Assembly (NCBI GenBank): GCA_963924565.1
Contig: OZ004610.1
Location: forward strand, 12,896,001-12,960,000
Direction of reading: 5' to 3'
DNA length: 64,000 nucleotides
DNA from: Ascidiella aspersa
Lineage: Eukaryota
A program made the translations under genes and the position numbers. Below the pieces are notes generated by a model. That model was not told the DNA's origin, did not search any database, and saw only the letters and a list, made by a program, of their open reading frames with translations. This document shows, in pieces, positions 50,233 through 64,000 of the stretch; positions within the stretch are counted from its first letter, which is position 1, and every line of letters begins with the position of its first letter.

Positions 50233-53200
50233 ATGCGCCACAATAATCATTGGAATCTCGTGCTTCTCATTGTGTTGGGACTGGCTGCCTGCAAGTTCAC
50301 ACTTGCTGATGAGAACGCCGAAGAAGGTTTGTTATTCTGGACAATTAATACAATTTTAAGAGCACATGTAGTGTATAAGGCAATGGTGATTCTTGAACTA
50401 TCTGCCGTGGCATAAAAGTGTGCCATGAGATTCGTAAAAAAACGTGTGTCGAAGTTTTTGAATTTTGGAAAATAGCATTGTATGATAAACAATCATTTAA
50501 GCAAGCACGTTAAACCTGAATGTACACTATTTATTAGAAAACTTATAATATTATGGCATTCACCTATACCATTGCCAATTATAAAAGCGATTTTTAAGTT
50601 ACAATTTTTTGTTGTTTTGTAAAAAAAATGCTCCGCGAATATTTTCTTAATTTTTTTACTGTACCGCAAGCAAAAAAAGGTTTAAGAACAACTGCGCTGT
50701 AAAGTAAAATCAACCCTGTCGGGAATATTATTTTCGCTTAAAAGAAAATTGGTATAGAAAGTGAGGTGAGAATGGAAATTTTGGGTTTGTCGTTACTTTG
50801 GTTTATAAATAATTTTGTTAAAGAATCGAACACAAACTAAGTTAAATCTTCACGTATTAATTGGATATTCGATAAATTGTGGATAAAACACTTCCCTGAC
50901 AGACGAAAAACACTTCCCTGACAGATCCCTTTGTCAGACGGCTGCGTCAAACAGACACCAAGTACCGATCACGCGCCGGTACAAACAGCGGTCGCAATTA
51001 TCCAAGCGATTTGTCTCAAGAAGATTGAAGGCTTGACGCCAACCCTCGAAGGATATTCGGTTAGACGAGGTGTAGTTCTGGTTTCTAAGTAGCGGATTGG
51101 AGATTCAAAATTAGACATTTCCCCACGGGCGTATGAGGCTTGTTTGATGAGGAAATACACTCGCCCGACGTTCCTTGCATTTAAACCTAAGAGAATGCCT
51201 TGGTTTTGGCGTCCCGCGTTCGCCTAATATCCGCCTTGTAACTATCAATCAGTCTGCTGGCAGCGGAAAAGGCTGAAATAAACTCGACCTTGATTGGGCG
51301 TTGAGGCGTAAATGAATTTGAAAATGACATATGGCTTTTGAGAGGACCAATCTTGGTTCGCGCTTCTATTGGTTTTTAAAAGGTATACACGTTGAAAAGG
51401 TTTGCGAAACATCAACATTGTGCTCCGATTGCTTTAAATTTATTCCACGCCATGTAAACGCCTGTTCATGCAGTTCCTGTGACTTAAAATACTTTAGGAA
51501 TGGTGTTTTATTGAAGAGAAACTACGATGCGGCTATCTGGTTTATCGTTATTTCTGCACACACCCGTAACTAAAAGTATAGTCACACTTGTGATTTATGT
51601 AAATTCTCCAAAAGTGCACTTGTTAATGTTAAGCATCACGAACCTGGTAATTTTCAAAAAGATTGTTATAATATGAATCCTAAATCGGTTAAAATCCTTA
51701 ACATGCCAACGCGACATTCTATCGGCAAGATCGAAACAGGCCAGATGACGTGACCTCTGGAAAAGGCCGGCACCATTTTTCTTCCGGTTTGTTTATCGTT
51801 TATATTGGCAAATCGCAGGGCTTTTCTACGAAGAGCTACATCCTTGTTGTTTCCGCGTTACTGTATGCGTCGGGCATCACCACATTAAGGAACCCAAGTA
51901 GGATAATTAACATTAAAAGTGGGGTGTGGGAAAAGGGTCCGGCCGGGCTAGTGTAGGCCGGCCAGTTCAACCTGCGGTCGAGCGAAAATGAAACGGTGGC
52001 GAGGTCGCATCGCGAGCCCGACGGGGCGCCGGTCCGCCGTGCCCGCGCGCCTTCCGTAAACAAGAATTTCGCCGAAAATCTGTTTTTGTTGGACGACGTT
52101 CGGTTCGCGTAAAGATTGGAATCAGGTCGTCGTTCGGCCGGCGGCTGAAAAAGTCGTCGCAGGCCACGGAATGAACCCGGTCTTCTTCTGTCCCTTCCGC
52201 CGTCTTTCGTACTATCCTAGATGTATTTAGGCTTAAAAAAGCTATTCATCTGGAGTTTTACATTTGTTAAGTAGTTTTGCTCAGTGCTTCCCAACCTTTT
52301 ATAGTTTGCGATCCACTTTTAATGAAAGTTTTATTGTGCGACCCACAATGAGGTATGACCAAACAAATAAAGTTGCATAAAACCTGCATCTTTACTACTG
52401 ACGTACGTATGCTGAAATAGTTATTGCGACACAACACATTTAATTGTTACGTATTTGTGATGTTGATGCATAAATGTTACGTAATGGTAATGCAATAAAA
52501 AAAAATTTCCCGATCTAATAGAAAACTGTAACATTAAGAGAAGCTTTGCGCCCCACCACTGAGCCTCGACCCACTGGTGTGAAGCACTGGTTTAGCTGAT
52601 TGCGTGCTGCTGTTTGTTTCTTCTAAAACAGTTATTAATGGCGATTGCATGTTAAAGCTCATGCAAGTTTGAGTAGGGCCTAACGTTATTTAAAAAACGG
52701 ACATTTCGTAATTTAAAATTCATTCACATTAAACACAATAGAAAAAAATATAAAAGTATACAAGCCTGAATAGAATTTCGCCTGAACTATTGCAAAATTA
52801 GCAACACTTTAATTTGTTTGTTTTTAGCTTGTGCATATCATTTATTTAGGCATATAGACGGCTTACGGCAGTGGTCGGCAAACTGTTTTTTGTCGCGGCC
52901 TAAAATAGTATTCGTTTCAGAGGTATTGACGGCCCACTATACGTAAAACGGGGGTGGCTCGAGGATATTTGTTTTGAGCTGGAGGCATTAAAATGGCGTC
53001 ACAAAGTTGCATCATAAAACAATTGTTTGTTTTTAGAAAATTAGAAAAAAAAATGCATTTTGCAGGGAGACTAAGTGCACACAGCGTTAGGCTTTTGACA
53101 CCAAGCAATGGTGAAATATTACACGTCGCCATGATGCCGAAAACACTGCGACGCCATAATGTATAATTGTATAACATAGGCCTACCATAAAACGAAGAAT

Positions 53201-62200: not shown

Positions 62201-64000
62201 TATGCCGCCGTCTGATGACATTTTAAAACCGACAAACGAAGTGGTGACAATGTAAATCGACTAGTTTTAAGGGGGCTATATGTAAACCGACCCACGGTGA
62301 AAAGACCACAAATATCGAACAAATATATTGTTGCGACCATGTAAATCGACCAAATTTAAGATGGCAGTGCAAGTCTTCCACTTTTGATACGGTCTTCTAC
62401 AAACTAAGCATTTTTTTGTCCACAGCGTGCGATTGCAGCGAATTCGGCTCGACCAACCTGACGTATTGTGACCCGAGAAGCGGCCAGTGCTTGTGCCGGG
62501 ATGGCGGTTTGTCCGGGCGCCGGTGCGACGAGTGCGCCGACGGGTTCCACGGGTTCCCAGAGTGCCGAGCGTGCAACTGCAACGGATTCGCGACCTCTTG
62601 CGATGACGTCACTGGCGTGTGTCGCAACTGCAGCGGCGGAAGGACGGGGGACCACTGCGAAACGTAGGCGGATGAATATATGCGTAATATGAACGTGTGT
62701 TTATTTAAGTCTGATACATAAAAATCGTTATTTGTGCTTTTCAATTTTTAAAGTTAGCACACATTTTATAAACCAGAAAAACAAGGTTTTTTTAATATTA
62801 CTTGTTTTAGACGTGCCGTTATGACGTAAATTTGTGACGTCATCTTGGAGAATTTTCATGCGTTTCCGTAAGAAAATATTTCAACGTTTCGTGAGAGAAA
62901 TTACTTACTTTAATCCTGCTTTCGAGTTAAAGTTTTAAATAACTGTTTAACTGCGTGTCTTCTTTGGAAGTGTCTTCATAGACGTTGGATATATGTTAGA
63001 TATAAACAAAAGTATAGGACCACAATGTCGAACACTAAGCCTATATGTAAGAAGAGTTACAATGGGTATAAAGAATGGTACCGTATACACCAGCATGACA
63101 AATCACGAACTTTTTCTTAGCTAAATATATTTCTACATTAATTTAGCTAAACGAACCAACAGCAACATAGTTTAAGAGTGAAAATAATAAATTTTAAAAC
63201 GAACCACCTCGGTAATAGTTAAGAAGCCCCACGTGTCTCGGATGATATAGCACTTATTATCTCAAGCTAGGTTTTGGCAAAGTAGTGCTTTTACGGAAGC
63301 TCACAATCCGCTAGGCTTAGTTCTCACTGACTTAAAAGACTCTTTTACCGTGCTTGTCAACCTGTATGCCATCTGTTGGTGATTTGCTTGGAAATGTCGG
63401 TTTATGACGCACTGATCACCAGTACTTTCATCACTAAAGTGGACTTATCTTTTCAAATTATATTAAAAATAATAAAGCATCGGTTTGGTGCCGGAATAAG
63501 AAAACTTCACGGAATATGCCTATTAATTTAATTGCGGTTTACATTTCAACAAAGCAAACCGATTTTTACGGTATCGTTAAAACGAACACACCGATCTACC
63601 GCGCAATTTTGATTGCACAGCTCACTTAAAGTAGAGCTGATTGAATAACAAATAATATAAAAATAGTGTATTATTTCCACCACTGCAACTATGCCTGGAA
63701 TTCAGTTTGCTTTGTGGAAATGTAAACCGCAATTAAATTAAAAGGCATATTTCGTTTCATTACTACTCGCATAGTTGTAATCGCTATATTAATTTCGACG
63801 CCGATTTTTGTATTCAGTTGCCCACCGGGCCACTACTGGAACATCAACCGGGCGGTATGCATGGAGTGCGAGTGCAACAACAACATAAATGCAAGCGACC
63901 CAGAGGCTTGTAATCCCGTTACCGGGATGTGCGAACGATGCCTTCACAACACTGCCGGCAAGAATTGCGCAAAGTGCGCTAAGTTCTATCACGGGAATGC
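50233..64000 (+). CDS. Secreted VWA-domain plus laminin-type EGF (LE) repeat protein, laminin beta-like; 3' end beyond the window
   Basis: Phase-consistent exons: 50233-50326 (signal peptide MRHNNHWNLVLLIVLGLAACKFTLA), 54025-54170 (DLILLLDGSSSVG, MIDAS DxSxS), 55208-55330 (IQYS), 55957-56093 (TFTAHAI; VLVLLTDG), 57191-57378 (IYAVGVG), 59621-59767, 62426-62663, 63818 to >64000 (8-Cys LE repeats, e.g. [57 protein letters not shown]). Confidence 0.88.
52282..52589 (+). mobile_element. hAT (Buster/Charlie-like) MITE
   Basis: TIRs CAGTGCTTCCCAACC...GGTGTGAAGCACTG. TSD GTTTTGCT/GTTTAGCT (7/8). Internal (G)CGACCCAC repeats. Confidence 0.75.
52869..53476 (+). mobile_element. hAT (Buster/Charlie-like) MITE, young insertion
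   Basis: Perfect TIRs CAGTGGTCGGCAAACTGT...ACAGTTTGCCGACCACTG and perfect 8-bp TSD GCTTACGG (52861-52868 and 53477-53484). Confidence 0.92.
57548..57899 (+). mobile_element. hAT (Buster/Charlie-like) MITE, young insertion, next to or nested in another hAT-like end starting at 57440
   Basis: Perfect TIRs CAGGGATGGCGAACC...GGTTCGCCATCCCTG and perfect TSD AGCTATCT (57540-57547 and 57900-57907). CAGTGCTTTTCAACC with GGGTGTAC repeats lies at 57440-57510. Confidence 0.9.
63512..63753. repeat. Inverted repeat / MITE-like fold-back element in an intron of the VWA-LE gene
   Basis: About 48-bp arms at 63512-63559 (GAATATGCCTATTAATTTAATTGCGGTTTACATTTC.ACAAAGCAAAC) and 63706-63753 are near-perfect reverse complements. 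Confidence 0.8.

What the first reader, a model, noticed from the sequence alone, without database searches (positions are those of the whole stretch)
50233..64000. VWA-laminin-beta chimera: an integrin-I-like MIDAS domain replaces the LN short-arm tip
Seen in sequence: signal peptide, then one complete VWA domain (DGSSS, T, LLTDG), then directly LE repeats. Established (recalled from memory, not aligned): laminin beta-1 domain III runs ...C.PNVVGRTC..., [30 protein letters not shown]..., [31 protein letters not shown]. The window gives, in the same order, [40 protein letters not shown] and [31 protein letters not shown]. Canonical laminin chains start with a polymerising LN domain and have no VWA. 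Inference: exon shuffling at the phase-1 intron 57379-59620 produced a laminin-beta-like chain that cannot self-polymerise through LN and may instead bind collagen or other ligands in a metal-dependent way. That would be a lineage-specific matrix linker.
Basis: partly seen in the sequence, partly recalled or inferred. Interest (0 to 1): 0.8.

Follow-up and report, generated by a model that had tools for sequence, protein, structure and literature searches.

The report
Ascidian VWA plus laminin-beta-EGF matrix protein
This is a real 12-exon sea-squirt gene for a secreted matrix protein, built by joining a metal-binding VWA domain to six EGF-like repeats copied from the laminin beta gene; it is not a laminin chain, because it ends soon after in a short, previously undescribed cysteine- and tyrosine-rich tail.

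Summary
On the + strand there is a signal peptide, one complete VWA domain with an intact MIDAS motif (DGSSS, T, LLTDG), and then laminin-type EGF (LE) repeats.

All 12 exons have GT-AG borders and compatible phases. They sum to 705 codons plus a stop.

The gene does not continue into a laminin coiled coil. It ends 3.4 kb past the window, after six LE repeats, a Thr/Pro linker, a conserved six-cysteine motif and a Tyr/Arg-rich tail. A DIX+PDZ (Dishevelled-like) gene follows.

It is collinear with predicted, unstudied proteins:
- Ciona intestinalis LOC100175399, 671 aa, also auto-named "matrilin-2-like".
- Styela clava LOC120328499, 1336 aa, with 18 LE repeats.
- An uninterrupted 683-aa ORF on a JGI contig.

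The LE block matches LE5 to LE11 of this genome's own laminin beta gene, minus one unit. It shares six intron positions and phases with that gene. The VWA exons share three intron positions with a paralogous VWA gene.

So exon shuffling at the phase-1 intron is well supported. "Laminin-beta-like chain" and "VWA replaces only the LN tip" are not. Function is inferred only: a rod-like, metal-dependent matrix linker. RNA reads were too sparse to show the junction in this genome. The scan's earlier notes do not cover this gene on other DNA.

The parts
50233..50326 (+). Exon 1: start codon and signal peptide, ends in phase 1
   Evidence: ATG at 50233. Hydrophobic core LVLLIVLGLAA, Kyte-Doolittle 19-residue maximum 1.95. 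Donor G|GTTTGT. The junction gives ..NAEE|EEC.., which parallels ..LEHEEC.. in Ciona.
54025..54170 (+). Exon 2: start of VWA, with MIDAS DGSSS
   Evidence: Pfam VWA positions 1-44, E 1.7e-7. 67% identical to Ciona residues 29-82. Intron after ..IGV is shared with the paralogous VWA gene in L017.
55208..55330 (+). Exon 3: VWA middle (IQYSYYY...AVEDIK), phase 0 at both ends
   Evidence: 59% identical to Ciona residues 78-118. Borders. Both introns are shared with L017.
55957..56093 (+). Exon 4: VWA, with the MIDAS Thr (GYQT) and LLTDG
   Evidence: Pfam VWA positions 73-117. 69% identical to Ciona residues 119-163. 61% identical to the paralogue in L017.
57191..57378 (+). Exon 5: end of VWA, ends in phase 1
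   Evidence: Pfam VWA positions 119-173, E 1.1e-5. 52% identical to Ciona residues 164-227. Donor G|GTAAAC.
59621..59767 (+). Exon 6: LE-a, equivalent to laminin beta LE5, phase 1 at both ends
   Evidence: Pfam EGF_laminin, E 3e-11. Best match in the genome's own laminin beta gene is the first LE exon after domain IV, with the same acceptor and donor phases.
62426..62663 (+). Exon 7: LE-b plus the first half of LE-c, equivalent to beta LE6 and the LE7 N-half. Ends in phase 2, just before cysteine 7.
   Evidence: Pfam E 8.7e-13. 50% identical to the own laminin beta exon, which is the best non-self match in the genome. Same phase-2 donor position.
63818..64000 (+). Exon 8, the part inside the window. 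The whole exon is 63818-64020 (to L003 1020). It holds the second half of LE-c plus LE-d (beta LE9-like).

The gene continues beyond the window, where L003 x equals window 63000+x:
- Exon 9, L003 1516-1727: LE-e (beta LE10-like, with two extra cysteines) and the start of LE-f.
- Exon 10, L003 2826-2919: rest of LE-f (beta LE11-like).
- Exon 11, L003 3236-3577: Thr/Pro linker plus the motif VNPGWS.C..CGG..WPSYC.G..CR.R.P.H..SP.RC.
- Exon 12, L003 4212-4405: WGCR, the Tyr/Arg/Ser-rich tail ..NLYKR and a TAA stop.
   Evidence: - Exon 8: Pfam E 6.9e-9. It matches the own laminin beta LE8C/LE9 exon, with the same phase-1 donor.
- Exons 9 and 10: 46% and 47% identical to the own laminin beta LE10/11N and LE11C exons, with the same phases.
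- Exon 11: 67% identical to Ciona residues 544-597. Invariant columns. Single copy in the genome. No Pfam family. KD19 maximum 0.16.
- Exon 12: aligns to Ciona residues 593-670. 12 Tyr and 10 Arg in 63 residues.

Best explanation
The locus is one 12-exon gene, window 50233 to window-equivalent 67405, + strand. It encodes a secreted protein of about 705 residues in this order: signal peptide, one VWA domain with a complete MIDAS, six laminin-type EGF repeats, a Thr/Pro linker, a conserved six-cysteine Trp/Arg-rich motif, and a Tyr/Arg/Ser-rich tail. It belongs to an unstudied protein family so far seen in ascidians (Ciona LOC100175399, Styela LOC120328499).

Shown: the gene is a mosaic made by exon shuffling. 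A four-exon VWA cassette comes from a collagen-VI/matrilin-type VWA gene family. A five-exon cassette is copied from domain III of laminin beta (LE5 to LE11, with one LE unit lost). Both cassettes keep their parental intron positions and phases. Two new 3' exons follow.

Shown: the protein lacks the LN domain, domain IV and the coiled coil. From these shown absences it follows that it can neither polymerise nor join a laminin trimer.

Inferred: it acts as a rod-shaped matrix adaptor. The MIDAS face of the VWA binds a matrix ligand, most likely a collagen, in a metal-dependent way, as collagen VI, matrilin and PTMP1 A domains do. The LE repeats form a stiff spacer whose length varies between species (6 or 18 repeats). 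The basic aromatic tail anchors or cross-links the other end.
For: - Domains: Pfam on single exons.
- Gene model: GT-AG throughout, phases compatible, 2118 nt, which is a multiple of 3.
- Collinearity: all exons except exon 1 match Ciona P0071, and JGI P0151 matches collinearly over most exons, exon by exon.
- Same architecture by Pfam in P0071, P0151 and Styela P0018: VWA plus 6, 6 and 18 LE repeats.
- P0151 is 683 aa on a contig of only 2340 nt, so its ORF is uninterrupted and VWA, LE and tail lie on one molecule there.
- LE exons match the own laminin beta gene in order, LE5 to LE11. That gene is the best non-self hit in the genome.
- Six shared intron positions and phases with that gene.
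- In the tree the family falls inside the laminin beta group (83/79), apart from gamma and alpha. Blastp bit scores are 223-307 for most beta chains and 142-207 for gamma and alpha; four beta rows (two with short alignments, plus beta-3 and the Amphiura row) score 121-192.
- VWA introns are shared with a paralogue on contig C9.
- VWA is nearest to collagen VI alpha-3 and PTMP1 among solved structures.
- No transmembrane segment.
- End of gene: the tail aligns to the C-terminal tails of the Ciona and JGI proteins, and the Styela protein shares the C-terminal module. DIX and PDZ exons of the next gene lie 8 kb downstream. Full-length laminin beta chains hit only the LE exons.
Against: - No RNA read in this genome spans the VWA-to-LE junction. 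The only RNA run gave a handful of reads on the LE exons and none in the bin that covers most of VWA exon 5.
- The NCBI orthologues are computer-predicted models.
- Function is inferred only from the domain families. No ligand, tissue or phenotype is known.
- The AlphaFold model is poor: mean pLDDT 48.8, and about 22 for the C-terminal part. It says nothing about the tail.
- Tree support for placement inside the beta group is moderate, not strong.
- The family's restriction to ascidians rests on searches with limited sensitivity and on length filters.
Confidence: 0.75

Rival explanations
1. First reader's reading. The window shows the N-terminal part of a laminin-beta-like chain in which VWA replaces LN. 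The L-beta knob and coiled coil lie beyond 64000, so the chain enters alpha-beta-gamma trimers that cannot polymerise.
For: The LE repeats are truly beta-type and follow beta order.
Against: - The ORF stops at 67403-67405, after a tail that aligns to the C-terminal tails of the Ciona and JGI proteins; the Styela protein shares the C-terminal module.
- The orthologues are 671, 683 and 1336 aa and have no coiled-coil or LAMB Pfam domain.
- Ten laminin-sized proteins, three of them checked as full beta chains, match nothing after 67405 up to the Dishevelled-like gene.
Confidence: 0.03
2. There are two adjacent genes, a small VWA gene and an LE gene. Computer models in other species merge them, and so does my model.
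For: RNA reads in this genome did not show the 57378/59621 joint. The bin that covers most of exon 5 had no reads, while the LE exons had a few.
Against: - Exon 5 ends in phase 1 without a stop, and exon 6 starts in phase 1 without a start codon or signal peptide.
- The same order occurs in three other sequences. One is an uninterrupted ORF on a 2340-nt contig.
- The whole model is in frame.
Confidence: 0.05
3. It is a MEGF9-like or other membrane-anchored LE receptor with an added VWA head. This was my own first guess, after seeing the Thr-rich stretch behind the LE repeats.
For: A short LE array followed by a mucin-like linker.
Against: No hydrophobic segment follows the signal peptide in the orthologues or in exons 11 and 12. 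KD19 maxima are 0.16 and -0.9, and the only peaks elsewhere are VWA beta strands. The tail is polar, basic and Tyr-rich.
Confidence: 0.03
4. The gene is intact, but its main role is structural cross-linking through the Tyr-rich tail (dityrosine or DOPA-type chemistry in tunic or matrix). The VWA would serve self-association rather than ligand capture.
For: The tail has 12 Tyr in 63 residues here and 18 in the last 75 residues in Ciona. The C-terminal ..YGLYR-like ending is conserved. VWA domains of collagen VI and matrilins also mediate self-assembly (established knowledge).
Against: There is no direct evidence. The tail sequence is poorly conserved apart from composition (27-37% identity).
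Confidence: 0.12

Closest known systems
Ciona intestinalis LOC100175399 (XP_078492225.1; XP_018669742.1 'matrilin-2-like'), Styela clava LOC120328499 (XP_039250943) and JGI protein P0151
   Same: Same order of signal peptide, VWA, beta-type LE repeats, linker, Cys/Trp/Arg motif and Tyr/Arg tail. Identity to the window's exons is 52%, 47% and 45%. These are orthologues or close family members.
   Different: Styela has 18 LE repeats, through tandem repeats of the LE10/LE11-like pair. The linkers differ in length and composition. All are predicted proteins with inconsistent automatic names, and I found no paper on them.
Laminin beta chains, short-arm domain III (LE5-LE13)
   Same: The six LE repeats are collinear with LE5-LE11 and share six intron positions and phases with this genome's laminin beta gene at C4:19.16 Mb. 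They also share the 10-cysteine LE10 and the C.CN.NI..SDPEAC-type LE9. They group with beta in the tree.
   Different: No LN, LE1-4, domain IV, LE12-13, L-beta knob or coiled coil. One LE unit (LE8, or LE7C plus LE8N) is missing. It cannot trimerise or polymerise.
Collagen VI, matrilin and mussel PTMP1 A domains
   Same: These are the best solved-structure matches of the VWA: collagen VI alpha-3 E 2.7e-44, PTMP1 1.1e-17. The MIDAS is complete. They are secreted matrix proteins.
   Different: Matrilins carry classical EGF domains and a C-terminal coiled coil. Collagen VI has a collagen helix. None of them has LE repeats.
MEGF9
   Same: A short array of beta-like LE repeats followed by a Thr-rich linker (from knowledge of the family, not tested by alignment here).
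   Different: MEGF9 has a transmembrane helix and no VWA. This protein has no hydrophobic segment.
P0217 (ENA, 915 aa): LamG3, LN, five LE repeats, then VWA
   Same: Another natural combination of LE repeats and a VWA in one protein.
   Different: Opposite order, with the VWA at the C-terminal end. It has an usherin-like LamG3+LN head and no shared tail.

Membership tests
Laminin beta chain | N-terminal LN domain (Pfam Laminin_N) | tested here: not met
   The N-terminus is a signal peptide followed directly by VWA. Full-length beta chains give no tblastn hit before 54000 in the window. The orthologues have no Laminin_N.
Laminin beta chain | Domain IV of beta type (LAMININ_IV_B) between LE4 and LE5 | tested here: not met
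   PF21199 hits only the true laminin beta gene at C4:19157199. It is absent from the orthologues.
Laminin beta chain | Beta-type LE repeats of domain III | tested here: met
   Collinear with LE5-LE11, shared introns, groups with beta in the tree.
Laminin beta chain | C-terminal coiled coil (domains II/I) with the L-beta knob | tested here: not met
   Stop at 67403-67405. No match to the coiled-coil parts of ten laminin-sized proteins up to the next gene. The C-terminal motif has no match in the own laminin beta locus.
Matrilin (an automatic name given in Ciona) | VWA domain(s) | tested here: met
   Pfam VWA.
Matrilin (an automatic name given in Ciona) | Classical EGF repeats and a C-terminal coiled-coil oligomerisation domain | tested here: not met
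   The repeats are 8-cysteine laminin-type EGF (PF00053). There is no Matrilin_ccoil hit, and the tail is Cys/Tyr/Arg-rich.
MEGF9-like membrane LE proteins | Single transmembrane helix after the mucin-like linker | tested here: not met
   KD19 maxima are 0.16 (exon 11) and -0.9 (exon 12). There is none in P0071 or P0151 beyond the signal peptide.
Ascidian VWA-LE-tail family (Ciona LOC100175399 group) | Collinear signal peptide, VWA and beta-type LE5-11 block | tested here: met
   Exon-by-exon tblastn, 40-69% identity per exon to Ciona.
Ascidian VWA-LE-tail family (Ciona LOC100175399 group) | C-terminal motif VNPGWS.C..CGG..WPSYC.G..CR.R.P.H..SP.RC...WGCR plus a Tyr/Arg tail ending ..LY(R/K)R | tested here: met
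   Invariant columns across three sequences. Also present in Styela P0018, E 1.4e-19.
Integrin alpha I domain | VWA with a MIDAS, inserted in an integrin alpha beta-propeller | tested here: not met
   The MIDAS is present, but the domain is N-terminal in a secreted protein. Integrin I domains score far below collagen VI and PTMP1.

The most novel reading that the evidence does not exclude
The conserved C-terminal module is a six-cysteine Trp/Tyr/Arg-rich knot followed by a Tyr-rich basic tail. It is absent from Pfam and from every non-family protein I could compare. It may be a new tunicate-specific anchoring or cross-linking domain, for example binding cellulose or sulfated glycans of the tunic, or forming Tyr-derived cross-links. 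In that case this family would tie collagen, through the MIDAS VWA, to a tunicate-specific matrix over a rod whose length is tuned by LE number (6 versus 18).
Probability: 0.15. Interest if true: 0.7.

Novelty: new variant of a known kind. Interest (0 to 1): 0.45.

Why it matters
This is an unusually clean, fully traceable case of exon shuffling in the extracellular matrix. Both donor cassettes, VWA and laminin beta LE5-11, still carry their parental intron positions and phases, and the donor laminin beta gene sits 6 Mb away on the same chromosome.

The result defines a conserved matrix protein family so far seen in ascidians. Its members currently carry contradictory automatic names: matrilin-2-like, laminin beta-2-like, MEGF11, uncharacterized. 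The family also has a C-terminal module with no known relatives.

It corrects the tempting reading that this is a non-polymerising laminin chain. If the tail proves to be a tunic- or glycan-anchoring device, the family would bear on how tunicates built their lineage-specific matrix.

Tried and rejected
- RNA evidence. About 6% of one RNA run was read. A few reads lay on exons 6 and 7, all with the first mate on the minus strand, which fits a + strand transcript. There were none in the bin that covers most of exon 5, and no joint reached the reporting threshold.
- MEGF9-like membrane protein. This was my own first guess (stated). I rejected it for lack of any hydrophobic segment.
- Alternative reading frames of exon 11, which could give a hydrophobic, GPI-like end. 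I rejected them because the frame-0 reading is 67% identical to Ciona.
- Search with the C-terminal 137 residues of the Ciona protein. It found only itself.
- ESM Atlas. No usable hit.
- Pfam on exons 11 and 12. Nothing significant.
- AlphaFold2 on the two-sequence alignment. Mean pLDDT 48.8, and the C-terminal part about 22, so it is uninformative. No fold search was made.
- L-beta-knob idea for the Cys motif. No similarity to the own laminin beta locus or to held laminins.
- Two metagenome scans for the JGI relative. Nothing found.
- Five literature searches found no paper on the family.
No search, fold or tree used a joined model of this gene or of the own laminin beta gene. Everything was done exon by exon by reference, or with database orthologues.

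
Full report
**Setting**

The window is G000:C4:12896001-12960000, in a 308-Mb genome of 75 contigs. Earlier follow-up notes on the same genome call it an ascidian. My best orthologues come from Ciona and Styela, which fits that.

I fetched 60 kb downstream. L003 position x equals window position 63000+x.

**Observation**

Stop-to-stop translation on the + strand shows a hydrophobic N-terminus at 50233, VWA-like pieces and cysteine-rich LE pieces.

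- Pfam on single exon translations gives VWA for three exons (E 1.7e-7, 2.3e-4, 1.1e-5).
- Pfam gives EGF_laminin for three exons (3e-11, 8.7e-13, 6.9e-9).
- VWA profile positions 45-72 were missing. They lie in a fourth VWA exon at 55208-55330.
- The MIDAS residues are all present: DGSSS, the Thr of GYQT, and the Asp of LLTDG.

**Gene model**

Reading the splice sites gives 12 exons:

| Exon | Coordinates | Content |
|---|---|---|
| 1 | 50233-50326 | start codon, signal peptide |
| 2 | 54025-54170 | VWA, DGSSS |
| 3 | 55208-55330 | VWA middle |
| 4 | 55957-56093 | VWA, GYQT and LLTDG |
| 5 | 57191-57378 | end of VWA |
| 6 | 59621-59767 | LE-a |
| 7 | 62426-62663 | LE-b, first half of LE-c |
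| 8 | 63818-64020 | second half of LE-c, LE-d |
| 9 | 64516-64727 | LE-e, start of LE-f |
| 10 | 65826-65919 | rest of LE-f |
| 11 | 66236-66577 | linker, Cys/Trp/Arg motif |
| 12 | 67212-67405 | Tyr/Arg tail, stop |

All introns are GT-AG. The phases are compatible. The total is 2118 nt, that is 705 codons plus a stop.

Coordinates above 64000 are window-equivalents of L003 positions.

Every comparison was made exon by exon, or with database proteins.

**The gene ends soon after the window**

After six LE repeats come a Thr/Pro-rich linker, a Cys/Trp/Arg-rich motif and a Tyr/Arg/Ser-rich tail that ends ..NLYKR-stop.

- Eight kb further on, DIX and PDZ exons mark a Dishevelled-like gene on the same strand.
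- Ten laminin-sized proteins match only the LE exons. Three of these I checked as complete beta chains with LN, domain IV and the LAMB helical domain.
- None of them matches anything before 54000 or after 67405.
- There is no hydrophobic segment after the signal peptide.

So there is no LN, no domain IV, no coiled coil and no membrane anchor.

**Relatives**

A full HMMER scan with exon 7 was dominated by laminins, as expected, because many repeats sum to high scores. Among the shorter hits, P0071 (671 aa) has VWA plus six LE repeats.

- P0071 is Ciona intestinalis LOC100175399. An identical record is named "matrilin-2-like", and fragments of it are named "laminin subunit beta-2-like".
- tblastn of P0071 against the locus hits every exon from 2 to 12, in order, at 37-69% identity. 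This includes the odd-looking frame of exon 11 (67%), and it settled which frame is real.
- P0151 (JGI, 683 aa) has the same architecture. It sits on a contig of only 2340 nt, so its ORF is uninterrupted. VWA, LE and tail are therefore on one molecule there.
- P0018 is Styela clava LOC120328499, earlier named "MEGF11". It is 1336 aa, with VWA plus 18 LE repeats. The word search had missed it because of its length filter.
- Two word-based searches of 5.8 billion clusters found no other protein with the full architecture within the length range.
- The family thus has at least four members. The three of known origin are ascidians.
- Motifs invariant in the three aligned sequences (this gene, Ciona and the JGI protein): VNPGWS.C..CGG, WPSYC.G..CR.R.P.H, SP.RC, WGCR, and ..LY.. 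near the end.

**Origin of the LE block**

PF21199 locates this genome's true laminin beta gene at C4:19.157 Mb. I fetched 40 kb around it and mapped its exons.

Each LE exon of our gene finds its best match there, in the same order:

| Our exon | Laminin beta exon | Identity |
|---|---|---|
| 6 | LE5 exon | 45% |
| 7 | LE6/LE7N exon | 50% |
| 8 | LE8C/LE9 exon | 41% |
| 9 | LE10/LE11N exon | 46% |
| 10 | LE11C exon | 47% |

- Genome-wide, that gene is the best non-self match of exon 7.
- The introns coincide in position and phase: phase 1 before LE5, phase 1 between LE5 and LE6, phase 2 in the codon before cysteine 7 of LE7, phase 1 after LE9, phase 0 inside LE11, and phase 1 after LE11.
- Our gene lacks one LE unit, the exon carrying LE7C+LE8N or its equivalent. 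In agreement, beta chains need about 350 residues to cover 289 residues of the Ciona LE block.
- In a maximum-likelihood tree of LE blocks, the two family members pair (84/87). They sit inside the laminin beta group (83/79), separate from gamma and alpha. Long-branch beta-3 and Amphiura rows fall elsewhere.
- Rows with alignments shorter than 220 residues were left out, and the genome's own laminin beta was not included, because that would have needed a joined model.

**Origin of the VWA**

- Among solved structures the nearest are collagen VI alpha-3 (2.7e-44) and mussel PTMP1 (1.1e-17). VWF A1 and integrin I domains score about 1e-8 to 1e-9.
- Exon 2 has paralogues in the genome.
- One of them, on C9 at 8.77 Mb (L017), shares the introns after ..GV, after ..I(K/V) and before Y(Q/H)GY. 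It is 61% identical in exon 4.
- The VWA therefore arrived as a multi-exon cassette with phase-1 outer borders.

**What did not work**

- RNA reads were too sparse to show any joint.
- AlphaFold on two sequences was poor and said nothing about the tail.
- The Atlas, Pfam and a region search gave nothing for the tail.
- Metagenome scans found nothing.
- I found no paper on the family.

**Interpretation**

Shown:
- One gene with a secreted mosaic product.
- VWA with a complete MIDAS, six laminin-beta-derived LE repeats and a new conserved tail.
- Made by exon shuffling.
- Conserved in ascidians.
- Not a laminin chain.

Inferred from the families involved:
- The VWA binds a matrix ligand through its metal site.
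- The LE array is a stiff spacer of variable length.
- The basic Tyr-rich tail anchors or cross-links.

The laminin-chain reading, the integrin-I label and the claim of an unrecorded architecture are not.

**Score**

This is a clear and well-documented evolutionary mosaic, and an unstudied family with a new tail module. Its parts are ordinary, it is already present in databases, and I have no functional data. I therefore rate interest at 0.45.

Noticed in passing
G000:C4:19160938-19161486 (L011 3938-4486), + strand: There is a 183-codon open frame, very rich in Thr and Ser, inside the 1.6-kb intron of the genome's true laminin beta gene, between the LE11 and LE12 exons. That is the same relative place where the VWA-LE gene carries its Thr-rich linker exon. 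It has no Pfam family. It could be an alternative or mucin-like exon, or only low-complexity sequence.
   Followed up: partly
window 57440-58280 (intron 5): This is a high-copy repeat. DNA contig depth reaches thousands against about 50 in the flanks. Most RNA reads laid on the stretch fall here, with many loose ends and internal rearranged joints. It is probably a transposable element.
   Followed up: no
window 63509-63565 and 63699-63755 (intron 7): A 57-bp inverted repeat pair, 91% identical, lies 134 bp apart just upstream of exon 8. It may be a small foldback or MITE-like element.
   Followed up: no
L004 2505-2735 and 8699-8935 (window-equivalent 75505-75735 and 81699-81935), + strand: These are DIX (E 8e-19) and PDZ (E 3e-8) exons of a Dishevelled-like gene, the next gene downstream.
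   Followed up: partly
L008 2881-3894 and L007 4603-5340, - strand: Two long, similar open frames encode a class I SAM-dependent methyltransferase (Methyltransf_11, E 7e-22 for the L008 copy). They look like a tandem pair of largely intronless genes.
   Followed up: partly
L007 444-653, + strand: An isolated Sushi/CCP-domain exon (E 1e-6).
   Followed up: no
G000:C9:8.75-8.82 Mb (L017, L018, L019), - strand: This is a cluster of several VWA-encoding exon sets related to the VWA of this gene. L017 shares three intron positions with it. It is probably a multi-VWA collagen-VI-like or matrilin-like gene or gene array, and resembles Styela 'collagen alpha-5(VI) chain-like' P0158.
   Followed up: partly
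protein P0217 (ENA, 915 aa): A different natural LE+VWA architecture: LamG3, LN, five LE repeats, then a C-terminal VWA. Its origin is unknown.
   Followed up: no
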